Shown here one piece after another: positions 233 to 63,474 of a stretch of 64,000 bases of DNA. The stretch lies in the IMG/VR virus record IMGVR_UViG_3300040801_004532, positions 1-64,000 of that record; one strand, 5' to 3'. The notes under the pieces are model-generated. The model was not told the DNA's origin. It saw nothing but the letters and a program-made list of their open reading frames with translations, and ran no database searches. Within the stretch, counting starts at the first letter, position 1. Every line of letters begins with the position of its first letter. The translations under genes and the position numbers were made by a program.

Positions 233-1747
233 TTATGGACATCTCCACCTTTGGAAGTTGACAGAACAAAAATAACCAGAACTACAACCAACTTCTGTTG
301 CAGTTATACACCAATCTCCACAATATGAACAAATGCCTGGATTCAACCCACCTCCCTCTGCGCATGATTCTTGGAAACCGAAAGATCCACTTATACGACA
401 TGTGTATTGCACACGACAGCCAGGGTTATTATAATAGATCTGTTCTGCTCCAGGAGTGCAACCACCCGAGACACCACCATGACAACTACTCCACCCACCT
501 GAAGTACAACGAACAATTCCAAGAACAGTATTGCCACAAATATCTGTTACTGTAATCTGTGCTGCACCACAAGCAGATCCATTAGCATATAGAGTATTGG
601 TTTTTCCATAAGTTCTTAAATTTTCCAATGAAAAACCAGTTCCCGAAACAGACCAATCATAATATCCACAAGTACCTGTTGAATCAACTGCAACTGTTAC
701 ACCAATTTCATCATCACCTTGAGAAATTATATCAGCACTTATATCATTATCCCAATCTATAGCAATACATGAACTACAATCTACTCCGCCTACAGACCAA
801 CCAACAGATTGTCCCTGATCATCAGTACAAGTAACATCAACATAACCTGAAATACTCTCTCCTGCTGTTATGGAGAAACCATTTTCAGTATCATTAAATG
901 TAAAACCACCTCCATTTATTACTGCTTCACAATCAACTGGAGGCATTCCACCATCAACTGTATAATTAATAGTCTGCCCTGGTTCGATTGTTTCTGATTG
1001 TCCAGAAGGTATGGTTGGAGGAGAAAAAAGTGGGTACCCTGGATAATAATCATCTATATCATCAGGTCCCATTCCATAAGTTTTAACCATCCAATTTAAA
1101 AAATAACCATCCTGGTCAATCGGATCTGAAAATTGCACCCGAAAACCATCAAATCTTTTTTCAATTACCATTAGATCATAAGGAAAAGGACCACTTGAAT
1201 AATCTAATGAAAACTCTAAACTAGCTACAACTGCATATTTTAAAGTGGTCATTTCTTCAGAAAAAACAATATTAGCAGTTGTGTCTCCAGAAGCTATTTC
1301 CCATAGACCGTCTGTTACAATATATGCTGGGTTTAACTCTGAACCATCTATTCCAGATGATCCAGATGATCCAGATGTTCCACTTGTACCAATGACTCCA
1401 GATGATCCAGAAGTTCCTGATGTTTTTGATGTACCAGATGTACCAGATGTACCAGATGTACCAGATGTACCCCCACTTGTTCCAGATGTACCAGATGTAC
1501 CAGAAGACCCAGAATAGCCTGAAGAACCAGAAATTCCAGCCTCACATGATCCAGCTTTCTGTCTTACAGCGCATAAGGTTATGAATGTATCTGCTCGCGT
1601 ACTATCCAGACCATATGTTGGATCGCCAGAGATATTTAGATGTTGCCCATCATAATATATCTCCACTTCGTTGGAATTTTCGGTACGACCCATACGTACT
1701 CTTTTATTTGTTCCAACATATAGTTTTCCATTCTTAACCTTGGCCAT
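233..1747 (-). CDS. Tail fibre/adhesin-like protein: GTS triplet tract, shared beta domain, Cys-rich C-terminal tip
   Basis: 504 aa; (GTS/GSS)n tract; C-terminal half paralogous to 4594-6120 and 3687-4571; AGGAG SD. Confidence 0.7.
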   Translation of the reverse strand: MAKVKNGKLYVGTNKRVRMGRTENSNEVEIYYDGQHLNISGDPTYGLDSTRADTFITLCAVRQKAGSCEAGISGSSGYSGSSGTSGTSGTSGGTSGTSGTSGTSGTSKTSGTSGSSGVIGTSGTSGSSGSSGIDGSELNPAYIVTDGLWEIASGDTTANIVFSEEMTTLKYAVVASLEFSLDYSSGPFPYDLMVIEKRFDGFRVQFSDPIDQDGYFLNWMVKTYGMGPDDIDDYYPGYPLFSPPTIPSGQSETIEPGQTINYTVDGGMPPVDCEAVINGGGFTFNDTENGFSITAGESISGYVDVTCTDDQGQSVGWSVGGVDCSSCIAIDWDNDISADIISQGDDEIGVTVAVDSTGTCGYYDWSVSGTGFSLENLRTYGKTNTLYANGSACGAAQITVTDICGNTVLGIVRCTSGGWSSCHGGVSGGCTPGAEQIYYNNPGCRVQYTCRISGSFGFQESCAEGGGLNPGICSYCGDWCITATEVGCSSGYFCSVNFQRWRCP

Positions 1748-1756
1748 TAGTACTCC

Positions 1757-3676
1757 TTATGTATTTTCATTAAGGACAAAAACTCTACCTCTATATGGCA
1801 TTATATGACTACTCGGATCTCCTGGATAGCCAGTGCCTCGATATGAATTTGTAGTAACCCATAGATAAGAGTCAACTCCGTATCCTTCCTTTGGGTAAAC
1901 GGTTGCAGTTGCTATCCCAGTAAATAATCTATCAGGGTAATAATATGCAGCATCCCAGTCGGAAAAAAGATGTGCAGCAACTGGTGAATTTTTAACTCCA
2001 AACGTCATTGTTGAGAGATCATATACAAGAATTGTCGAACCTTGAGATCCTTGTACAGATCCACATACATATAACTTACCTTTATATGGTACTATTTTTT
2101 GTATATTACTGAAAGCAGGTTGTAAACTAATTGTAGGTTCAGCAACAATTTGCCAACTACCGACTCCATCATTCCACACACAGACCTTATCATATTGATC
2201 ATAACCAAGATAATCTCCAAACGCAACAAAAAGATACCCGTTAGCATTACATAGTGCTATTGGTCTCCATTTTGCAGACGCACTTCTGTCTGTATTAAAA
2301 TAAGGAGGAAGATAAGACCAACCGCCTCCGTCAGGATACCATGGTCCAAGAAAGTCACCTGCTGTTTCTGTGAATGAAAGTATAACATACAATGGTCCAT
2401 CCTCTGTAATTGGAGAATATTCCTGACCAGAAACAGTTTCTACCCCTGATAATGACGTATATATAGTTTCTCCTTGAGCATAACGTATCGCGTAGTTAGG
2501 ACCAATAACCCCATATGCATTTTCATCTGTATGAGTGACTATATATACACCTTCTCCAAATTGACGAAATCCACAAACAGTCCAATCTGGCTCTGCATAA
2601 TATGGTTGCCACATTCCAACCCAATATTGCATACTACCACCTAAAAATGGAGAAGTCATTAATGATCCATTAGCTTCATGTAAGTGAGTTCTAGCACCTG
2701 TACTGTGCATATCTCGATCTGTTGAAGTCAAAACACTAATTTCTCCACTTCCGGGATAAGTCCATATATCATGATCTGGGGATAAAACTGAGATAGCACT
2801 CCAGTCAGCGGCAAAATATAACGATCTTGGCGATCCTGCTGATTCACCTACTGCAGTAAATAATGGAGTATCCGCATAAAATGACCCAGATCCAAGCTGT
2901 TTAAATCCGGCTCCAGCTACAGCAGGCGGTGAAGAAAACTCAGGATAAGGTGGTGGAGGCGGAGGTGGAATAATATGGATATTCTCTGACTTTGCCACAT
3001 CTTCAACTAACCAATCAAAAACAAAAGCAGAGGAATCAATTGGTTGATTAAAAGCAACCTTAAAACCGTAGGATGTTTTATCAAATATTAAAAAGTTAAA
3101 TGTTGGGTATGGAACATTGGTCCCCCTGAAGTTTATCGATCCAGTTACAGAATAATATTCTACAATCCTTGGAGTTTCAAAAATAATCAACGATGTTGTA
3201 TCACCGGGATTGAGCTCCAACATTCCTGCTGTAACTATGTTTGTTGAATCGAATTGTGTTACTAATGCAGATGTGCCTGAGTTACCGCTACTACCTGAAG
3301 TACCCGAAGTTCCATCTGTAGCTGAAGTTCCGCTTGACCCTGAGGTTCCATCTATTCCACTAGTTCCTGATGAACCCGATGTCCCAGAAGAGCCACTTGT
3401 CCCACTTGTCCCACTAGATCCAGATGTTCCGCTTGTTCCACTAGTACCAGAAGAGCCAGATGTACCACTTGTCCCTGCACCGCCAGCCTTTACATACTCC
3501 TCAAAGACAGATCTAATAATAAAAGTGTTTTCATTAAGATCTTGTACTCCTGCTGTAGGCGCACCAGATATATTAATAGTTTCACCATCCCATTTAACGA
3601 TAACTTCATTGTTATCACCAAAAATAATGGCTTGGTTTGTTTTGATGTTTAGATTTCTATTTTTATATCTGGCCAT
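1757..3676 (-). CDS. Tail fibre/adhesin-like protein with GTS tract, poly-Pro linker and aromatic beta-rich C-terminus
   Basis: Start moved to ATG 3676 (MARYKNRNL) behind AGGAG; N-terminus resembles those of 233-1747 and 4594-6120. Confidence 0.7.
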   Translation of the reverse strand: MARYKNRNLNIKTNQAIIFGDNNEVIVKWDGETINISGAPTAGVQDLNENTFIIRSVFEEYVKAGGAGTSGTSGSSGTSGTSGTSGSSGTSGTSGSSGTSGSSGTSGIDGTSGSSGTSATDGTSGTSGSSGNSGTSALVTQFDSTNIVTAGMLELNPGDTTSLIIFETPRIVEYYSVTGSINFRGTNVPYPTFNFLIFDKTSYGFKVAFNQPIDSSAFVFDWLVEDVAKSENIHIIPPPPPPPYPEFSSPPAVAGAGFKQLGSGSFYADTPLFTAVGESAGSPRSLYFAADWSAISVLSPDHDIWTYPGSGEISVLTSTDRDMHSTGARTHLHEANGSLMTSPFLGGSMQYWVGMWQPYYAEPDWTVCGFRQFGEGVYIVTHTDENAYGVIGPNYAIRYAQGETIYTSLSGVETVSGQEYSPITEDGPLYVILSFTETAGDFLGPWYPDGGGWSYLPPYFNTDRSASAKWRPIALCNANGYLFVAFGDYLGYDQYDKVCVWNDGVGSWQIVAEPTISLQPAFSNIQKIVPYKGKLYVCGSVQGSQGSTILVYDLSTMTFGVKNSPVAAHLFSDWDAAYYYPDRLFTGIATATVYPKEGYGVDSYLWVTTNSYRGTGYPGDPSSHIMPYRGRVFVLNENT

Positions 3677-3686
3677 TAAATAACTC

Positions 3687-4571
3687 CTATTGTGGGCATC
3701 CCCACTTTTGCAATCCCGGATTAGCACCTGAAAAACCAGAATTATAATATCTACCAGTTTCACATCTTCCGCTTACTTGAGCAAATGGAGGATGACAATA
3801 AGATAGATAAGCTGTTGAACCATCTTCACATGAATATGCTGGATTGTTGCCTGCATTTTGACCACCACATCCCCCACAATATAAAGATCCACTATAGGCA
3901 TATCCGTACTTATATAACCCATCTGGAGAAGTTGCACTACGAGCTATCATACATGTATATACATATGATCTAGTATACGTCAAATTTGAGGTTGGAGTAC
4001 AAGTCAACCATGTACCAGAAGTACATTTAACTTCATGTATTACTTCATTACCACAGGCATCAGTTACAGTAACTTCCGCTGCGCCACAAGCGGATCCATT
4101 TGCATGAAGTGTATTAGTTGTCCCATATGTTCTTGTGTGTTCTAGTGAAAATCCAGTTCCTGAAACTGACCAATCATAATATCCACATGCTCCACCGTTA
4201 ATAGCAATTGTTGTTGAGTCATTTTGAGCAACAGAAGTTCCGCTTGTAATATCGTCCCATGTGATTTCTGTACATGAAGTACAATCTACACCTCCAACAG
4301 ACCATGTTCCAGTTGTATTTCCTTGGTTATCTGTGGCTTGAACTTTAATATAACCACTAATATTTTGTCCCGCAGTTACTCTACAACCAGTTTCTGTTGA
4401 CTTAACTGTAAAACCTGTACCCCCACCCCCAACATTTTGACAATTGAAAGGTGCCTGTCCTTCATTAATCAATAACTCTACGGATTCTCCAGATTCAACG
4501 GTTTGCGGCGATCCACCATCAAATTCTGGCGGAAAGTATGTTCTTTTAAATGTTAGTGATATATTTCCCAT
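3687..4571 (-). CDS. Virion protein with Ig-like repeats and Cys-rich variable tip
   Basis: 294 aa; shares CG(Y/F)YDWSVxGxGFSL...CTSG...WxCP with neighbours. Confidence 0.65.
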   Translation of the reverse strand: MGNISLTFKRTYFPPEFDGGSPQTVESGESVELLINEGQAPFNCQNVGGGGTGFTVKSTETGCRVTAGQNISGYIKVQATDNQGNTTGTWSVGGVDCTSCTEITWDDITSGTSVAQNDSTTIAINGGACGYYDWSVSGTGFSLEHTRTYGTTNTLHANGSACGAAEVTVTDACGNEVIHEVKCTSGTWLTCTPTSNLTYTRSYVYTCMIARSATSPDGLYKYGYAYSGSLYCGGCGGQNAGNNPAYSCEDGSTAYLSYCHPPFAQVSGRCETGRYYNSGFSGANPGLQKWGCPQ

Positions 4572-4593
4572 TTAACTCCTCTTAAATTTTAAA

Positions 4594-6120
4594 TTATGGA
4601 CAGCTCCATTTATAAATATCCATCCAATCAGGTCTTGCTGGCCAAGCACAATTATTCATTGAAACATCGCTATATCCATATTTTTCTAAGAATGGGGTTC
4701 TTCTATCAACTGTTTCACCATCTGGGCAAGTTAGAACATCTTGATCGAATATTCCAGGATCATCACACCCATTAACCTTAACAGATGTTAAGCTATACCA
4801 GCATGCCTGTGCTGTATTTCCACCTGTACAATTTGTACAACTTATAGCACAACCCGAAGGAGAACCGCAATTTATTTGATTTACAGTTCCACATTTAACC
4901 ATAGTACCTGATGTACATTTTATTTTTTCTGTAATAATATTTCCACATGCATCTTCTACAGTTACAGTTGCAATACCACAAGCACTACTACTTGAATATA
5001 GGGTGTTTGTGGTTCCGACTGTCCTTAAACTTCCTAATGAGAATCCCTCCCCTGTTACAGACCAATCATAAAATCCACAATTGGAGTTTGTTGAAGTTGA
5101 ATCAATCGCAATTGTTACTGAGTCATTTGTTCCAATGACAGAAGCACTTAAATCATGATCCCACTCCATAACAATACATGAACTACAATCAGTACCTCCT
5201 GCTCCCCAACTCCCAACATATCTTCCTGCATCGTCTGTTGCACCAACAGTTATATAACCAGATGCTCCCCCGGGGTCAGCAGTTAAGGTACAACCATTAG
5301 TATATGAACCAATTGTAAAACCACTTCCGCTACCAGATTCTTGATAGCAATTATATGGAGGAAGTCCACCATCAATTTCTAAATATATAGTCTCTCCTGG
5401 TTCAACTGAGTCAGGAGAGGTTTGTGAAAATTCTAAAGTTGGATTTCCAATTTGGTCATAGTCTTTTAAAAGAAAATCAATAATATATGTCTTATCAACT
5501 GGACCGTTTACCTTGATTTTAAAACCTGTTGTTGTCTTATCAAATACCAATGCCTTATAAAAAGTATATGGAGGATCCACTGCATAACATTGTGTTATAG
5601 ATACTGTATATTGATTATGAGGTCTTGGCGATGTAAAGGTTAGAGATGCGGTTGTATCTGATGAGGTTGTATCAAATACTAAAGCTCCAGCTAAAACTAT
5701 TAATGAACTTGAGTCTGAAGGAATAAACGATTCTCCGGATGTTCCTGATGTACCAGATGTTCCTGATGTTCCTGGATCTCCCGAAGTCCCACTCGTTCCA
5801 CTCGTTCCTGATGTTGACCCACTTGTTCCTGATGTGCCAGATGTTCCAGAAGATCCCGAAATTCCCGAAGATCCGCCAGTACCAGAAGTTCCTGATGATC
5901 CACTTGTACCCGATGTCCCCGATGTACCGGAAGGAGACCAATCATCCAAATCCTGTCTGGTTACAAACGTATTGCCTGCAGTTCCATCAATACCTGAAAC
6001 TGGAGTTTGATCTGTTCTTACGAAGTAATCATCATAATAAATTCTTCCTTGGTCATTATCACCAAGTTTAATATCTTCATCAGCTCCGAAGAACACATCG
6101 CCTTTTCTAAATTTTGGCAT
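4594..6120 (-). CDS. Tail fibre/adhesin-like protein (paralog of 233-1747)
   Basis: 508 aa; GTS tract; same domain order as 233-1747. Confidence 0.7.
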   Translation of the reverse strand: MPKFRKGDVFFGADEDIKLGDNDQGRIYYDDYFVRTDQTPVSGIDGTAGNTFVTRQDLDDWSPSGTSGTSGTSGSSGTSGTGGSSGISGSSGTSGTSGTSGSTSGTSGTSGTSGDPGTSGTSGTSGTSGESFIPSDSSSLIVLAGALVFDTTSSDTTASLTFTSPRPHNQYTVSITQCYAVDPPYTFYKALVFDKTTTGFKIKVNGPVDKTYIIDFLLKDYDQIGNPTLEFSQTSPDSVEPGETIYLEIDGGLPPYNCYQESGSGSGFTIGSYTNGCTLTADPGGASGYITVGATDDAGRYVGSWGAGGTDCSSCIVMEWDHDLSASVIGTNDSVTIAIDSTSTNSNCGFYDWSVTGEGFSLGSLRTVGTTNTLYSSSSACGIATVTVEDACGNIITEKIKCTSGTMVKCGTVNQINCGSPSGCAISCTNCTGGNTAQACWYSLTSVKVNGCDDPGIFDQDVLTCPDGETVDRRTPFLEKYGYSDVSMNNCAWPARPDWMDIYKWSCP

Positions 6121-53841: not shown

Positions 53842-53918
53842 CGGGGCGTGGCGCAGCCTGGTAGCGCGCCTGCTTTGGGAGCAGGAAGCCGGAGGTTCAA
53901 ATCCTCTCGCCCCGACCA
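53842..53918 (+). tRNA. tRNA-Pro(UGG)
   Basis: Cloverleaf; CCTGC-TTTGGGA-GCAGG; CCA end. Confidence 0.95.
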
Positions 53919-54501: not shown

Positions 54502-54558
54502 TTATATTCGAACCCTAAATTATTTTAGAACAAAAAAATAAAAGGGGTTCGACTATAA
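54502..54558 (+). promoter_or_regulatory. RBS-sequestering hairpin with late promoter motif in its loop
   Basis: TTATA-T-TCGAACCCT pairs with GGGGTTCGA-C-TATAA; loop contains TTTAGAACAAAA. Confidence 0.65.
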
Positions 54559-55328
54559 TGATTTGTGAATATTGTAAAAATAAACACGATGGATCATATG
54601 GATCGGGGAGATTTTGTTCTTCAAAATGTGCCAGGGGGTTTTCTACATCAAAGAAAAGAAAAGACATTAACAAAAAAGTGTCGGAAACTCTTAAAGGATA
54701 TAAAACAATTCCTGGCGGAAAAGTTAAATTATGCGATTATGGTTGTTGTAAAGAAGCAAAATTTCAATTGAAAAACAAAAAATGGTGTTGCTCAGAAAGC
54801 CATAATAAATGCTCAGCTGTTAGAAAGAAAAATTCTAAAGGTTTGACAAAATCGCATAAAAATGGGCGTCCTGCTTTTCCAGAAGGAGCTTATTTAAAGG
54901 GGCATGAGTCATTCAAAAAAAATCTTAAAGAAAAATATAAAAAGTTAAATTTTATTGATAAACCTATAGCAGAAAAACGAAAAATTATATTAAAGGATCA
55001 AAACAATAAATGTGCCATTTGTAATATTGAACAAGAATGGAATGATAAACCTTTAATTTTCCATCTTGATCATATAGATGGCAACAGAAAAAATTGGAGT
55101 AGAGATAATCTAAGATTTATCTGTCCCAACTGTCATAGCCAAACAGAAACATATTGTAGGGGAGGTAATAAGAACATATCAAATAAGCAGCTTAAAAAAT
55201 TACTAATAGAAACAAACTTTAATTTTACAAAAACTTTAGAATTAGCAAACTTATTTCCTGGTGGTTATAACTGGAACCGTGTTAAAAAAATAGCAAGTAA
55301 AATGTGCCAGGGTGATGGAATTTGGTAG
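54558..55328 (+). CDS. HNH homing endonuclease
   Basis: MICEYC...GSGRFCS..CA N-terminus; CAIC...HLDHIDG...N...NLRFICPNCHSQT. Confidence 0.9.
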   Translation: MICEYCKNKHDGSYGSGRFCSSKCARGFSTSKKRKDINKKVSETLKGYKTIPGGKVKLCDYGCCKEAKFQLKNKKWCCSESHNKCSAVRKKNSKGLTKSHKNGRPAFPEGAYLKGHESFKKNLKEKYKKLNFIDKPIAEKRKIILKDQNNKCAICNIEQEWNDKPLIFHLDHIDGNRKNWSRDNLRFICPNCHSQTETYCRGGNKNISNKQLKKLLIETNFNFTKTLELANLFPGGYNWNRVKKIASKMCQGDGIW

Positions 55329-55872: not shown

Positions 55873-55917
55873 TTTGTAATCAGTAAGTCGGGGGTTCGAC
55901 TCCCTCCTCGGGCTCCA
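55841..55917 (+). tRNA. tRNA-Thr(UGU)
   Basis: ACTGA-TTTGTAA-TCAGT; CCA. Confidence 0.95.
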
Positions 55918-56116
55918 AAAAAAAGAAAGGATTGAATTATGAATCCAGATGGGTATCATTTGGCATCAACTATATTCCTTCTGGTAAATGGGATTTGGTG
56001 GGGTAAAAATACTCCAATAAATCTTTTAATAAAAACTATATTCTGGAGTCTTGGTATATGGGGGGTAATTATTTGCCTTATTGATTTTGGATTGCTAACT
56101 CCTTAATTTAGATAAA

Positions 56117-57691: not shown

Positions 57692-57781
57692 GCCTGGGTG
57701 GTGGAACCTCGGTAGACACAAGGGACTTAAAATCCCTCGGGAATTATTCCTGTGCGGGTTCGATTCCCGCCCCAGGCACCA
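57692..57781 (+). tRNA. tRNA-Leu(UAA)
   Basis: AGGGA-CTTAAAA-TCCCT; long variable arm; CCA. Confidence 0.95.
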
Positions 57782-58069
57782 ACATTAAGAAAGGAACAGA
57801 ATTTGTATAAGCTGACCTACTGTTTAAATAACCTTGGTGAATATGAAACATTTGCAGAGGCATTCTCTGTACTATATAAAAAATTAAGAGAAGATTCTAA
57901 AGATGGATTTTCATTACAGCTTCTCGAGACAGCAATATGGATCGACCATGATGGATATGGAAGTCCAATCTTCTTTTATGATATAGTAGATAGAGCTAAT
58001 AAACAAAACTTGCTTAAAGATGGCCAACTTGATGAAAAAGTCGTAAAAGAAGCAATAAATAAAGGGTGA

Positions 58070-59134: not shown

Positions 59135-59680
59135 ATGGAAATGACAATAACGGAAGGTTTGAAAAGACTGAAACTCCTTGAAAAAAGGATGGCCAGAAAC
59201 TGTGGGGAAATCGAAAGATATTCCTCAATTCTATCAAATGAAAAACCTGCTTTCGATACAGAAGAAAAGCAGAAGCAAGAAGTGAAAAGTCTTATCCAGG
59301 CAAATATGGACCTGGTACAAGAATATGAAAAACTCAAAGCATCAATCGACTATACCAATCTTGTTATCAAGGTTAAGATTGGTGATCAAACCAGGACAAT
59401 CCATGGGTGGTTGACCATTCTGAGAAAGACTGGTCAGTTGCTCATTCAAACCTACAATTCCTTGAGCACGAGGGATGCAACATCAAGACAGCCCCGTTAT
59501 CGGGACCAGAACACAGGACAAAGCCCAACAGTTGTTCGTCTCTATGATGAAAATCAAAAACGGGATGGCCAAAGACTTTGGGAAGACCTTACCAAAGGAA
59601 AAGAGGTTGAAGGTCGTCTTGAAGTTATCAACGCAACAACCCAACTGCTGGATCCGCCCGAACCAGTTGAAAGGAGTTAA
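59135..59680 (+). CDS. DIP1984/DUF6847-like helical protein
   Basis: MTITEGL..LK.L.KR N-terminus, L...I..TN....V centre and L...NA.T.L C-terminus fit the family pattern as recalled; TAAGGAG SD. Confidence 0.55.
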   Translation: MEMTITEGLKRLKLLEKRMARNCGEIERYSSILSNEKPAFDTEEKQKQEVKSLIQANMDLVQEYEKLKASIDYTNLVIKVKIGDQTRTIHGWLTILRKTGQLLIQTYNSLSTRDATSRQPRYRDQNTGQSPTVVRLYDENQKRDGQRLWEDLTKGKEVEGRLEVINATTQLLDPPEPVERS

Positions 59681-59684
59681 CTCT

Positions 59685-60017
59685 ATGAAGAAGTTTGGAG
59701 CATTCCTATTAGTAATTGGTTTCGTTCTGCTCCTTTGTGCTTCTGCAAGTGCTGATGGATTCTATAGGTGTGGCGGATATATGGTCAAGATTGGAGATCT
59801 GAAGTTTCAGGTCCTTCAAAAATGTGGACCGCCAGAAATGAGAGAGTTTGTCGGAAACTCGGCAGAAAGACAAACATATAGAAGGGGCAGAACAAGAAGT
59901 TATAATTACGACATGCCGGTCGAACAATGGATATATGGACCTGACCGTGATCTATGGCATGTTATCACCTTTAAAGGTGGTAAAGTATATAATATCGAAA
60001 GTATCATTCAACGATAA
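59685..60017 (+). CDS. DUF2845-like exported protein
   Basis: Signal peptide, RCG...V.IGD....V..KCG.P...E.W.Y......F.GG.V..I. Confidence 0.75.
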   Translation: MKKFGAFLLVIGFVLLLCASASADGFYRCGGYMVKIGDLKFQVLQKCGPPEMREFVGNSAERQTYRRGRTRSYNYDMPVEQWIYGPDRDLWHVITFKGGKVYNIESIIQR

Positions 60018-60104
60018 AGTTTGGGTTCGCTGGTCCTCACTGCTGCTTTTGTGCGGTGGGTTGGTATTAAGACCAGAGGGCTACGAGAAGCGGACCCAAT
60101 ACTT
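60017..60104 (+). ncRNA. Small structured RNA element
   Basis: TTGGGTTCGC/GCGGACCCAA, TGGTC/GACCA and CTCACTGC/GCGGTGGG nested stems. Confidence 0.55.
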
Positions 60105-60107
60105 CTT

Positions 60108-60399
60108 TTGGATTCTGTAGTGTAAACAAGTGAAACCGGGGAGCCCTTTCATATTGGGATAAATATGAGACTACAATGGATATAGGTTGATTACCTATAA
60201 AACTATTTCAAGTTTCAAGTATAAATTCTCAAGTCTCACTCGTGACCGCGGCGAGGGTAAATAACCATTTGCGGGTTTCAAGTTTAAAGGGGTAAAGAAT
60301 CAAGTTTAGGGCTTGGAATGATTCCATGCGAGAAAAACCCAGGTTTGGTGGTGCATCTCTCCAGCAACATTGCCACTACTGGCTGCTACACGGATCCAA
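60108..60399 (+). ncRNA. ~290-nt structured RNA with five TCAAGT repeats
   Basis: Closing stem TTGGATTC-TGTAGT / GCTACA-C-GGATCCAA; internal hairpins; no credible ORF. Confidence 0.65.
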
Positions 60400-60408
60400 T
60401 CAATTTAA

Positions 60409-60493
60409 TGCGGCGTAGAGAAGCGGTCAATCTCAGAGGGCTCATATCCCTCCGGCGTAAGCCTCACGGGTTCGAATCCCGTCGCCGCTACCA
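60409..60493 (+). tRNA. Initiator-type tRNA-Met(CAU) with a long variable arm
   Basis: U1xU72 mismatch, A11-U24, GGG/CCC anticodon stem, 13-nt variable region, CCA. Confidence 0.85.
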
Positions 60494-60497
60494 AAAT

Positions 60498-60575
60498 GGG
60501 GGCTTGGATTAATGCTTGATCGCCCTGACTCAAGAAGCAGGGAGGAGTAGAGTAGCGACCTACTAGCCCCCACCA
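60498..60575 (+). ncRNA. Aberrant tRNA-like RNA
   Basis: GGGGGCT/AGCCCCC-A-CCA acceptor, D-like stem, CCCTG/CAGGG with 10-nt loop, AGTAG/CTACT with 9-nt loop lacking TTC. Confidence 0.7.
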
Positions 60576-60592
60576 TTAAAAAAGGAATAACC

Positions 60593-61168
60593 ATGATAAA
60601 AGAAGATACAACGAATGAAGAACTAGAGAAGGAAAAACAAAAATTAGAAAAAGACCTTGAGTCTTTAAGAAAAAATTATAAAACATTAATGACCAAATTG
60701 ACAAAAACAACTAATCGAATAAGTGAAATCGACAGCGAATTGGATAAAAGAAATTTAAAAGGAAATGATATTGAAAAATTATTAGAAACATTTCCTGAAA
60801 CCGAGACAAAAGAAAAATTGCTGCGCGATCTATTGAGCAAGTTTGATCTTTCAGCAGAAGGATATTTTCCCGATACTGGTCAAAGATGTATCCAAATTTC
60901 CTTGGAAAAGGACAGTAAAGAATCTCTCCAAAAAACATATTATGGTCTTAAATTACTTTTACCATATCTCAAACCAGTAAAAGATGGTAATATCTATGTA
61001 GATATTTTTGAAAGCACTTTATCAAGATTTGGAATCTATACTCTTATTATCAAAAAAGAGAAATTTGAAGTTGAGAAAACAACATGTGGACATCCCGAAA
61101 CAATCTACTCAAATAAAGATTTGAAAAAAGTTTTAGAATATATTCAAAAACATCATTATTACGAATAA
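60593..61168 (+). CDS. Hypothetical protein with N-terminal coiled coil
   Basis: 191 aa with SD. Confidence 0.65.
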   Translation: MIKEDTTNEELEKEKQKLEKDLESLRKNYKTLMTKLTKTTNRISEIDSELDKRNLKGNDIEKLLETFPETETKEKLLRDLLSKFDLSAEGYFPDTGQRCIQISLEKDSKESLQKTYYGLKLLLPYLKPVKDGNIYVDIFESTLSRFGIYTLIIKKEKFEVEKTTCGHPETIYSNKDLKKVLEYIQKHHYYE

Positions 61169-63366: not shown

Positions 63367-63455
63367 GGAGGGGTGGTCAAGTATGGCGTGACAGCGGTCT
63401 TGAAAACCGTCGGGTGTAAAAAGCCTTGCAGGTTCGAATCCTGTCCCCTCCGCCA
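63367..63455 (+). tRNA. tRNA-Ser(UGA)
   Basis: GCGGT-CTTGAAA-ACCGT; long variable arm; G73-CCA. Confidence 0.93.
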
Positions 63456-63474
63456 TTAAAAAGAAAGGTTCAAA

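What the first reader, a model, noticed from the sequence alone, without database searches (positions are those of the whole stretch)
60498..60575. tRNA-shaped RNA with intact stems but non-canonical loops
Seen: perfect 7-bp acceptor stem plus ACCA and all four stems intact, yet the D-loop lacks GG, the T-loop is 9 nt without TTC, and the anticodon loop is 10 nt. It starts 4 nt after the initiator tRNA. Inference: intact pairing with loop divergence argues for selection as a tRNA mimic or decoy rather than decay.
Basis: partly seen in the sequence, partly recalled or inferred. Interest (0 to 1): 0.6.

Follow-up and report, generated by a model that had tools for sequence, protein, structure and literature searches.

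The report
tRNA-shaped phage RNA lacking tRNA loops
A 248-kb T4-like phage carries, four bases after its initiator tRNA gene, a 78-base gene that folds like a tRNA and ends in CCA but lacks the loop sequences a working tRNA needs; two relatives keep the fold through compensating mutations, so the shape is selected, but its job is unknown.

Summary
Window 60498-60575 (+) forms a cloverleaf with 7/4/5/5-bp stems and no mismatch, followed by ACCA. The D-loop has no GG, the T-loop is 9 nt without TTC, and the anticodon loop is 10 nt. ARAGORN and the Rfam tRNA model both miss it. A relaxed cloverleaf descriptor finds only real tRNAs plus this element in the window, against 2 hits in 60 shuffled windows.

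Only two other copies exist in all the collections searched (L003, L020). All three loops differ between copies, while the stems are kept through two double compensatory changes and one G.U-to-G-C change (simulation p about 0.001-0.006). This is not a randomly decaying pseudogene.

Its closest paralogue is the phage's own tRNA-Pro, and its acceptor stem matches the phage's tRNA-Val. The relatives have a proper 7-nt anticodon loop (CAG) in a compact, tRNAPyl-like architecture; the window copy has that loop disrupted.

My best reading is a tRNA-derived, non-decoding, tRNA-shaped small RNA matured by tRNA-processing enzymes. It resembles T4 RNA C/D in position. A decoy role is untested. The element is absent from some near-identical neighbourhoods, so it is dispensable. 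Interest is moderate.

The parts
60498..60575 (+). The tRNA-shaped RNA gene, 78 nt including the encoded ACCA
   Evidence: Called only by ARAGORN metazoan-mitochondrial mode, as 'mtRNA-??? (caag)'.
60498..60504 (+). Acceptor stem, 5' strand GGGGGCU. Pairs with 60565-60571.
   Evidence: 7 Watson-Crick pairs. Pair 6:69 is C-G in the window and L003 and U-A in L020. The 5' strand is the same as in tRNA-Val of the same contig.
60507..60521 (+). D-arm: 4-bp stem GAUU/GAUC with a 7-nt loop AAUGCUU, no G18G19
   Evidence: U13.G21 becomes C-G in L003 and L020, where the loop shrinks to 4 nt.
60523..60542 (+). Anticodon-arm equivalent: 5-bp stem CCCUG/CAGGG with a 10-nt loop ACUCAAGAAG. ARAGORN -mt reads it as an 8-nt loop with the 4-base anticodon CAAG.
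   Evidence: Relatives have CCCUGU/GCAGGG plus the 7-nt loop CUCAGGA. It resembles the tRNA-Pro anticodon arm.
60546..60564 (+). T-arm: 5-bp stem AGUAG/CUACU with a 9-nt loop AGUAGCGAC, no T54-Psi55-C56
   Evidence: Pair 51:65 is U-A here and C-G in L020, and 4 of the 9 loop bases differ in L020.
60565..60575 (+). Acceptor stem 3' strand AGCCCCC, then discriminator A and the encoded CCA
   Evidence: ACCA is invariant in all three copies. All tRNAs of the cluster encode CCA.
60409..60493 (+). Initiator-type tRNA-Met(CAU) with a long variable arm, 4 nt upstream. It probably shares a precursor transcript with the element.
60576..61168 (+). A-rich spacer with RBS (UUAAAAAAAGGAAUAACC), then a 191-aa ORF of unknown function (phrog_7208). 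This is the conserved downstream neighbour in the two relatives.
53842..53918 (+). tRNA-Pro(UGG), the closest paralogue of the element within the window
   Evidence: 52/78 identical in a global alignment; local alignment z=5.8. It is the only tRNA hit by the element's covariance model, at 32.7 bits.

Best explanation
It is a real RNA gene on the + strand, derived from a tRNA gene. The anticodon arm resembles the phage's tRNA-Pro and the acceptor stem resembles its tRNA-Val. Selection has kept the four cloverleaf helices and the 3' ACCA, while the universal D-loop and T-loop nucleotides have been lost. In this phage the regular 7-nt anticodon loop has been lost as well.

Proposed mechanism (inferred, not shown):
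1. It is transcribed with the tRNA cluster as a dimeric precursor with the initiator tRNA.
2. RNase P cuts at G60498, guided by the G-C-rich acceptor/T-stem stack and the RCCA end.
3. The 3' side is trimmed back to the encoded CCA.
4. It accumulates as a stable tRNA-shaped RNA of about 78 nt that cannot act as an ordinary decoder.

What selection sees is overall tRNA shape plus a CCA end, not loop sequence. I therefore think it works by occupying a protein that recognises tRNA shape or the CCA end. Candidates are a host tRNA-targeting defence enzyme or a tRNA-processing enzyme. Acting in cis on the neighbouring mRNA seems less likely.

Status of each step: the fold, its non-chance nature, its conservation by compensation, its tRNA ancestry and its failure of tRNA loop criteria are shown. 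Transcription, processing, stability and the binding partner are inferred.
For: - The cloverleaf is real and non-random.
- Three copies exist (window, L003:95-167, L020:183-255). The stems are kept by two double compensatory changes (6:69 C-G to U-A; 51:65 U-A to C-G) and one U.G to C-G change. The D, anticodon and T loops all differ.
- Placing the 11 substitutions observed between L003 and L020 at random gives at least 2 compensated pairs with at most 1 broken pair in only 0.1-0.6% of trials.
- In the formal pair count, 96% of cells are paired and 0 of 500 shuffles reach the observed values. Slid-partner controls give 40-52% paired.
- RNAalifold on an independent MAFFT alignment returns the cloverleaf.
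- G.U pairs, the ACCA end and co-orientation with all tRNAs and ORFs point to a + strand RNA.
- The element occupies a standard slot of the repeated module 'tRNA, A-rich spacer with RBS, ORF' (family D2).
- tRNA ancestry is supported.
- It is not a standard tRNA.
- In the window the initiator tRNA 4 nt upstream already supplies a processing site, so a pure 'punctuation' role would be redundant here.
- Precedents: T4 RNA C and RNA D lie directly after tRNA-Arg in the T4 tRNA cluster, with roles unknown (PMC3014915). RNase P processes phage regulatory RNAs and tRNA-like structures (PMC4919922). The abstract of PMC12710915 reports RNase P cleavage of a non-tRNA substrate depending on a 3' RCCA motif.
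Against: - Only three closely related copies exist. No others turned up in IMG/VR, JGI metagenomes, GTDB genomes or INPHARED phages.
- No loop is conserved, so there is no obvious conserved binding surface beyond shape.
- L020 has two weakened pairs at the acceptor/T junction: 7:68 is A.A, and 49:67 is lost through a 1-nt deletion.
- The element is absent upstream of a 100% identical ORF in L019. In L018 an unrelated hairpin takes its place.
- The ORF and element phylogenies disagree, so substitution rates cannot be calibrated against the neighbouring gene.
- In the window copy the cloverleaf is 1.7 kcal/mol above the MFE.
- There are no expression, processing or binding data.
- No antisense target for any loop was found in the 68 kb available.
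Confidence: 0.42

Rival explanations
1. Non-functional relic. It is a duplicated tRNA gene that lost function. The stems look intact because the copies are young or because selection acted only in the past, and the window copy is now decaying.
For: - It shows presence/absence polymorphism next to identical or near-identical ORFs.
- All loops vary. The window copy has lost the regular anticodon loop that its relatives keep.
- L020 has two weakened pairs.
- The lineage is tiny.
Against: - All universal D/T-loop nucleotides are gone, yet 21/21 pairs are intact in the window and L003 and 19/21 in L020, with two double compensatory changes.
- Against the paralogous tRNA-Pro row, several more pairs changed on both sides and stayed paired.
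- Neutral decay deep enough to erase the loops should have broken the stems.
Confidence: 0.22
2. Cis-acting processing or stability element. The tRNA-like fold recruits RNase P and 3' processing to separate the upstream RNA from the downstream 191-aa ORF mRNA, or it caps that mRNA's 5' end. It would be comparable to plant mitochondrial t-elements or mascRNA-type punctuation.
For: - The element ends 17 nt before the ORF start, next to its RBS.
- Homology between the window and L003 begins exactly at the element's 5' edge and runs through the ORF.
- Other relatives carry other stable hairpins in the same 5' UTR slot: L020:260-341 and L018:3-84.
- tRNA-like structures are known RNase P punctuation marks (PMC4919922).
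Against: - In the window a genuine tRNA 4 nt upstream already provides the cut.
- A minihelix would be enough for this role, yet the D and anticodon arms are maintained.
- In L020 an 82-nt hairpin separates the element from the ORF. In L019 the identical ORF has no structure upstream.
Confidence: 0.17
3. An unusual but working decoder tRNA with a compact core, like tRNAPyl or mt-tRNASer(UCN). It would read CUG (anticodon CAG) in the relatives. In the window copy it might read a quadruplet through an 8-nt loop (CAAG).
For: - L003 and L020 have a 1-3-nt connector, a 4-nt D-loop without GG, a 6-bp anticodon stem closed by U.G, the 7-nt loop C32-U33-CAG-G37-A38, a 3-nt variable region, A73 and CCA.
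- ARAGORN -mt calls them tRNA-Leu(cag) and calls the window copy a 4-base anticodon caag.
- This combination is the architecture described for tRNAPyl and mt-tRNASer(UCN) (PMC7609411).
- The phage also encodes a suppressor tRNA(CUA) just outside the window.
Against: - The T-loop is 9 nt and its sequence is not conserved.
- The anticodon-loop length differs between copies: 7 nt in the relatives against 8-10 nt in the window.
- No synthetase candidate appears among the large ORFs of the window.
- From established knowledge, bacterial LeuRS relies on tertiary-core elements that are missing here.
- ARAGORN -mt is permissive.
- There is no sign of recoding in the window.
Confidence: 0.12
4. A DNA-level or selfish palindromic element (MITE/REP-like, or a recombination hot spot of the hyperplastic tRNA region), or a chance fold.
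For: - The slot is mosaic, with different inverted-repeat elements in different relatives.
- An HNH endonuclease gene lies in the cluster.
Against: - G.U pairs would be A.C on the other strand.
- The four-helix cloverleaf geometry and the ACCA end are strand-specific, and chance expectation is about 0.03 per window.
- There is a single copy in 68 kb and none elsewhere.
Confidence: 0.05

Closest known systems
Phage T4 RNA C and RNA D (species 1 and 2 stable RNAs, rnaC/rnaD)
   Same: They are small non-tRNA RNAs encoded in the phage tRNA cluster, on the same strand and only a few bases after a tRNA gene. T4 tRNA-Arg is followed by rnaD 1 nt later and then rnaC 6 nt after that. Both lineages are T4-like: the window has a Gp23-type capsid and a T4-type polymerase. 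The function of the T4 RNAs is still unknown (PMC3014915; PMC9697503).
   Different: There is no significant sequence similarity: only a shared GAGUAGCG 8-mer, z about 1.5. The T4 RNAs are 119 and 139 nt, and no CCA is encoded at their annotated 3' ends. RNA C keeps a canonical GGUUCGAAUCC T-arm. The present element is a complete 78-nt cloverleaf with no canonical loop.
Compact-core tRNAs: tRNAPyl and mammalian mt-tRNASer(UCN)
   Same: In the relatives (L003, L020) the shared features are a single or short connector between the acceptor and D stems, a 4-nt D-loop without G18G19, a T-loop without T-Psi-C, a 6-bp anticodon stem and a 3-nt variable region. These are the features listed for those tRNAs in PMC7609411.
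   Different: The T-loop is 9 nt rather than 7. The anticodon is CAG/CAAG rather than CUA or UGA. No PylRS-like gene was seen. The window copy has a 2-nt connector, a 7-nt D-loop and a disrupted sixth anticodon-stem pair. Decoding is unproven.
Non-tRNA RNase P substrates with tRNA-like ends (P1/P7 C4 antisense RNA precursor, plant mitochondrial t-elements, mascRNA)
   Same: The shared logic is an acceptor-like helix plus an RCCA 3' end or a tRNA-like fold, used so that tRNA enzymes cut out a non-decoding RNA (PMC4919922).
   Different: Those RNAs have other bodies or known antisense targets. No target complementarity was found here, and processing has not been tested.
Phage tRNAs that counter tRNA-targeting defences (T5 tRNA-Lys versus PARIS; tRNAs versus retron PtuAB; anticodon-loop variants)
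   Same: It is a phage tRNA-cluster gene whose anticodon-loop region varies between close relatives. It sits in an accessory, mosaic region (PMC10264068, PMC11464382, PMC11555353).
   Different: The known cases are functional replacement tRNAs with canonical D/T loops. This RNA fails tRNA criteria, so if it acts in defence evasion it would be a decoy rather than a replacement. That has not been demonstrated.

Membership tests
Canonical bacterial/phage tRNA (Rfam RF00005) | Cloverleaf with a 7-bp acceptor, 3-4-bp D stem, 5-bp anticodon stem and 5-bp T stem | tested here: met
Canonical bacterial/phage tRNA (Rfam RF00005) | Conserved G18G19 in the D-loop and T54-Psi55-C56 in a 7-nt T-loop | tested here: not met
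   The D-loop is AAUGCUU and the T-loop is AGUAGCGAC, 9 nt. The same lack is seen in L003 and L020.
Canonical bacterial/phage tRNA (Rfam RF00005) | 7-nt anticodon loop with U33 and a purine at 37 | tested here: not met
   The window copy has a 10-nt loop on the 5-bp stem, or an 8-nt loop as ARAGORN -mt reads it. The relatives meet this feature if a sixth U.G pair is counted.
Canonical bacterial/phage tRNA (Rfam RF00005) | Reaches the family score threshold or is called by a standard tRNA finder | tested here: not met
   There is no RF00005 hit at E<=10 for any of the three copies. ARAGORN bacterial mode finds nothing even at lowered thresholds.
Canonical bacterial/phage tRNA (Rfam RF00005) | Aminoacylation and use in translation | not testable with these tools
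   Needs a charging assay or tRNA-seq.
Compact-core tRNA (tRNAPyl / mt-tRNASer(UCN) type) | One nucleotide between the acceptor and D stems, a 4-5-nt D-loop, a 6-bp anticodon stem and a 3-nt variable loop | tested here: inconclusive
   L003 meets all four. L020 meets three, with a connector of 2-3 nt. The window copy meets only the 3-nt variable loop. Criteria are taken from PMC7609411.
Compact-core tRNA (tRNAPyl / mt-tRNASer(UCN) type) | CUA anticodon with a cognate PylRS | tested here: not met
   The anticodon is CAG or CAAG. No class II synthetase domain appears among the window ORFs scanned. The remaining 180 kb of the contig could not be read.
T4 RNA C / RNA D | Non-tRNA stable RNA gene placed directly after a tRNA in the tRNA cluster of a T4-like phage | tested here: met
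T4 RNA C / RNA D | Sequence or structure homology to rnaC or rnaD | tested here: not met
   Local alignment z=1.5, p about 0.1. The folds differ. The covariance model R1 gives no hit in the T4 locus L009.
tmRNA (one- or two-piece) | tRNA-Ala-like acceptor with G3:U70, a canonical T-arm and a tag reading frame | tested here: not met
   Pair 3:70 is G-C. tmRNA_permuted scores 13.9 bits against a 47-bit threshold, and that match mostly covers the tRNA-Met T-arm. ARAGORN finds no tmRNA.
RNase P-processed tRNA-like RNA | Acceptor-like helix stacked on a T-stem-like helix, with a 3' RCCA | tested here: met
   The 7-bp and 5-bp helices are contiguous, and ACCA is invariant in the 3 copies.
RNase P-processed tRNA-like RNA | Cleavage by RNase P at position +1 | not testable with these tools
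   Needs an in vitro M1 RNA/C5 assay or 5'-end mapping.

The most novel reading that the evidence does not exclude
The phage makes a dedicated tRNA mimic. It would be a structurally selected, non-decoding cloverleaf with a CCA end whose fast-changing loops track a host tRNA-targeting immune enzyme (an anticodon nuclease or a CCA-end modifier) and soak it up. That would be an RNA decoy class of anti-defence, distinct from the known replacement tRNAs. A second exotic reading is also not excluded: a compact-core tRNA outside the Pyl system, with an 8-nt loop in this phage that could read a quadruplet codon.
Probability: 0.18. Interest if true: 0.8.

Novelty: new variant of a known kind. Interest (0 to 1): 0.5.

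Why it matters
Phage tRNA clusters are now seen as part of the arms race with tRNA-targeting bacterial immunity. The role of the odd 'non-tRNA' RNAs in those clusters, such as T4 RNA C and D, has been open for about fifty years. This element is a small, cleanly defined case. It has a complete cloverleaf with a CCA end, it has lost every loop signature of a tRNA, and it shows evidence of selection on the helices. It also has natural variants with a regular or a disrupted anticodon loop, and natural 'deletion' alleles. Together these make it a usable test object for whether phages use tRNA-shaped RNAs as decoys, as processing signals or as exotic decoders. It also shows that standard tRNA finders miss such genes.

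Tried and rejected
1. Close relatives by DNA. Megablast and blastn against 50,697 phage records found nothing for the element. Exact and gapped patterns in IMG/VR found only the source contig plus chance hits in GC-rich coding DNA (L005, L006). Two JGI metagenome scans gave nothing and one chance hit, L022. The GTDB genome scan gave one chance hit, L023.

2. Relatives through the downstream ORF. This route was productive for L003, L018, L019, L020 and L021. Distant homologues at 25-47% identity have no such element upstream. One 4.8-kb JGI contig (sample 3300042731) has a 584-nt gap in the right place, but its DNA could not be fetched.

3. The upstream ORF (59475-60017) has no homologue apart from itself.

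4. Link to the T4 ValRS modifier Vs. The ORF191 family sits beside vs in KP15 and RB43, and the element shares its acceptor stem with tRNA-Val. The two ORFs downstream of ORF191 in the window are not Vs homologues. I dropped this lead.

5. Antisense-RNA idea (as for C4). There is no complement to any loop in 68 kb with up to 1 mismatch.

6. Homology to T4 RNA C through the shared GAGUAGCG motif is not significant.

7. tmRNA, Y-RNA and any other Rfam family gave no hit.

8. Promoter and terminator scans around the element were no better than shuffles.

9. Short peptide reading frame. An ATG at 60496 opens 7 codons in the window and 21 in L003, and there is no ATG in L020. It is not conserved.

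10. Using the neighbouring ORF's synonymous divergence as a neutral clock was abandoned. The ORF and element trees disagree (window-L020: ORF 94% identical, element 76%), which indicates recombination between them.

11. TAG recoding. The suppressor tRNA lies outside the window, and reading through TAG gives no gain in ORF length inside the window.

Full report
CONTEXT

The window is the first 64 kb of IMGVR_UViG_3300040801_004532, a 248,136-bp viral contig. Window and contig coordinates coincide. The phage is a distant T4-like myovirus. It has a Gp23-family major capsid protein, a T4-type DNA polymerase at about 26% identity to known phages, a DnaB-like helicase, a portal and tail fibres. No phage in INPHARED resembles it at the DNA level.

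From 53.8 kb onward the + strand carries a tRNA cluster. There are 11 tRNAs inside the window and at least two more just beyond it. They are interleaved with small ORFs in a repeated module: tRNA, then an A-rich spacer with an RBS, then an ORF.

THE OBSERVATION

- A perfect 7-bp acceptor stem, GGGGGCU/AGCCCCC.
- A 4-bp D stem with one U.G pair.
- A 5-bp anticodon stem and a 5-bp T stem.
- A73 followed by an encoded CCA.
- A 7-nt D-loop without GG, a 10-nt 'anticodon' loop and a 9-nt T-loop without UUC.

It begins 4 nt after a tRNA-Met. That tRNA has bacterial initiator hallmarks: a 1:72 mismatch, A11:U24 and three G-C pairs closing the anticodon stem. It also has an unusual 13-nt variable arm.

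ARAGORN (bacterial mode, even at lowered thresholds) and the Rfam tRNA model at E<=10 do not see the element.

A 7-bp stem followed by NCCA is not rare on its own: about 29 non-tRNA instances occur on the two strands of the window. The full geometry is rare. A deliberately relaxed cloverleaf descriptor found only four type-I tRNAs and this element in the window, and 2 hits in 60 dinucleotide-shuffled windows.

The cloverleaf of the window copy is 1.7 kcal/mol above a rod-like MFE. That rod depends on D-loop bases that the relatives lack.

RELATIVES

Every DNA search for the element returned only the source contig or chance hits in unrelated GC-rich coding sequence.

Relatives were reached through the downstream 191-aa ORF (phrog_7208). 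A profile-free HMMER scan finds 475 representative homologues, but only five sequences share 84% or more identity. Their contigs are short.
- L003 carries the element at 95-167.
- L020 carries it at 183-255. L021 has only its 3' end.
- L018 has an unrelated hairpin with an 18-bp stem in the same slot.
- L019 has an ORF 100% identical to that of L020 but only AT-rich sequence upstream.

More distant ORF homologues have no such element. A covariance model built from the three copies finds nothing else in the window, the 4 kb beyond it, the T4 tRNA region or the other loci. The one exception is a weak hit to the phage's tRNA-Pro.

WHAT THE COMPARISON SHOWS

All three loops differ between copies:
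- D-loop: AAUGCUU, AAGC, AAGU.
- Anticodon loop: ACUCAAGAAG against UCUCAGGAG.
- T-loop: AGUAGCGAC against CUUAACGUC.

The helices persist.
- Pair 6:69 is C-G in two copies and U-A in L020.
- Pair 51:65 is U-A in two copies and C-G in L020.
- Pair 13:21 is U.G in the window and C-G elsewhere.
- The ACCA end never changes.
- L020 does lose two junction pairs: 7:68 is A.A, and a 1-nt deletion removes the partner of A49.

The cloverleaf is the MFE of L003 and of L020. It is also the RNAalifold consensus on an independent MAFFT alignment.

In the formal count on the model-guided alignment, which includes tRNA-Pro, 96% of cells are paired and 5 pairs changed on both sides. No shuffle out of 500 reaches that value. 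Sliding the 3' partners drops pairing to 40-52%.

A simulation placed the 11 L003-to-L020 substitutions at random. It produced at least 2 compensated pairs with at most 1 broken pair in 0.1-0.6% of trials.

I could not use the neighbouring ORF as a neutral clock. The ORF and element trees conflict (window against L020: ORF 94% identical, element 76%), so recombination separates them. Consistent with this, homology between the window and L003 starts exactly at the 5' edge of the element.

ORIGIN

The element is closest to the phage's own tRNA-Pro(UGG). Global identity is 52/78 and the local alignment z is 5.8. The anticodon arm is CCUGC-UUUGGGA-GCAGG in tRNA-Pro and CCUGU-CUCAGGA-GCAGG in the relatives.

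Its acceptor stem and 3' end (GGGGGCU...AGCCCCC-ACCA) match those of the phage's tRNA-Val(UAC) at contig 64,616-64,691 except for pair 1:72.

It is therefore tRNA-derived. Relative to tRNA-Pro, several stem pairs have changed on both sides and stayed paired, while every universal loop nucleotide has been replaced. Neutral decay would give the opposite pattern.

AN UNEXPECTED RESEMBLANCE

Redrawn, L003 and L020 have the following features:
- a 1-3-nt connector;
- a 4-nt D-loop;
- a 6-bp anticodon stem closed by U.G;
- a regular 7-nt loop C32-U33-C-A-G-G37-A38;
- a 3-nt variable region.

ARAGORN's metazoan-mitochondrial mode calls them tRNA-Leu(cag). It calls the window copy a tRNA with a 4-base anticodon, caag. 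This combination is the 'compact' architecture described for tRNAPyl and mammalian mt-tRNASer(UCN) (PMC7609411).

The 9-nt, non-conserved T-loop does not fit that architecture, and neither does the anticodon. The window copy departs furthest from it, with a 2-nt connector, a 7-nt D-loop, an extra A and U31-to-A in the anticodon arm. By eye, a D-loop GC/GU may pair with T-loop G58C59/A58C59 and covary in L020. With three sequences this is only a lead.

MECHANISM

Shown:
- a non-chance cloverleaf with a CCA end on the coding strand;
- tRNA ancestry;
- failure of tRNA loop criteria;
- helices maintained by compensation;
- loops free to vary;
- dispensability in some genomes.

Inferred:
- co-transcription with the initiator tRNA as a dimeric precursor, as with T4 tRNA pairs, which are spaced 1-10 nt apart;
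- 5' cleavage by RNase P and trimming to the encoded CCA (substrate logic in PMC4919922);
- accumulation as a stable tRNA-shaped RNA that does not decode.

Selection seems to see shape plus the CCA end, and a real tRNA already supplies a processing site 4 nt upstream. I therefore favour a trans-acting 'shape mimic' that engages a tRNA-binding protein (confidence 0.42). The rivals are:
- a functionless relic (0.22);
- a cis processing or stability element for the downstream ORF (0.17);
- an exotic working tRNA (0.12);
- a DNA-level element or a chance fold (0.05).

The decoy idea fits current knowledge that phage tRNA genes counter tRNA-targeting immunity (PMC10264068, PMC11464382, PMC11555353). 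Nothing here tests it.

COMPARISON WITH KNOWN SYSTEMS

By position and context, the nearest analogue is T4 RNA C/RNA D. These are small stable RNAs encoded directly after tRNA-Arg in the T4 tRNA cluster, with roles still unknown (PMC3014915; PMC9697503). There is no sequence or fold homology to them, so I do not file the element as a member.

It also fails membership of canonical tRNA, tmRNA and tRNAPyl on tested defining features. The membership table gives the details.

It is best described as a new variant of the known kind 'tRNA-like RNA genes in phage tRNA clusters'.

VERDICT

Interest is moderate (0.5). The element is a cleanly defined object that standard tools miss, and it comes with natural variants. 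It is also known from only three closely related sequences, and there are no expression data.

Noticed in passing
window 60409-60493 (+): The tRNA-Met(CAU) has bacterial initiator hallmarks (U1.U72 mismatch, A11:U24, GGG/CCC in the anticodon stem). It also carries a 13-nt variable arm with its own 3-bp stem, which makes it 85 nt long. That is unusual for an initiator tRNA.
   Followed up: partly
L001:9368-9444 (contig 66,784-66,860, just outside the window): A canonical-looking tRNA with a CUA anticodon, i.e. an amber suppressor (ARAGORN labels it 'Pyl'). A tRNA-Val(UAC) at L001:7200-7275 has an acceptor stem matching the element's. Inside the window, reading through TAG does not lengthen ORFs, so recoding is not evident there.
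   Followed up: partly
window 60018-60408 (+): This is the only large non-coding gap in the tRNA cluster, at 391 nt. It starts with a very stable multi-helix structure at 60017-60105, closed by a stem of more than 10 bp. It also contains four copies of TCAAGTYT at 60208, 60229, 60278 and 60300. The whole gap folds with z=-3.1 and has no Rfam match.
   Followed up: partly
L020:260-341, L021:5-86, L018:3-84: In relatives, the slot between the tRNA-like element and the 191-aa ORF holds other strongly folded elements. One is an 82-nt rod beginning GGGGGUGGG and ending CCCACCCCC-AUCA (-41 kcal/mol). In L018 there is an unrelated hairpin with an 18-bp stem. L019 has an ORF identical to that of L020 but neither structure. 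The 5' region of this ORF is a recombination mosaic.
   Followed up: partly
window 54558-55328 (+): An HNH homing-endonuclease-like ORF lies inside the tRNA cluster, and its 3' end overlaps the start of tRNA-Leu(UAG) at 55306. This recalls segB in the T4 tRNA cluster.
   Followed up: no
window 60593-61168 (+); L007:2749-3348; L008:2797-3462: The 191-aa ORF belongs to a large phage family of unknown function (phrog_7208), with 475 representatives at 50% clustering. In Klebsiella phage KP15 and Escherichia phage RB43 the homologue sits immediately upstream of vs, the valyl-tRNA synthetase modifier. The window's own downstream ORFs are not Vs homologues.
   Followed up: partly
window 55892-55931, 57756-57795, 63430-63469, 60565-60592: A junction recurs across the cluster: a tRNA 3' end (…CCA), then an A-rich spacer, then an AAGAAAGG-type RBS. 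The tRNA-like element has the same 3' junction as tRNA-Ser(UGA). Such junctions could serve as recombination points for module shuffling (family D2).
   Followed up: no
window 233-6120 (-): Three neighbouring ORFs of about 500-670 aa each contain collagen triple-helix repeats near the N-terminus. They lie next to a 1272-aa tail-fibre gene and are probably paralogous fibre proteins.
   Followed up: no
L012:1092-1181 and 1498-1585; L015:3270-3346: Other large phage contigs fetched through the ORF family also hold odd tRNA calls. There is a 90-nt 'tRNA-Phe' and an 88-nt 'tRNA-Gln' in a dense tRNA array on a 185-kb contig. There is also a UCA-anticodon (opal suppressor / 'SeC') tRNA on a 524-kb contig.
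   Followed up: no
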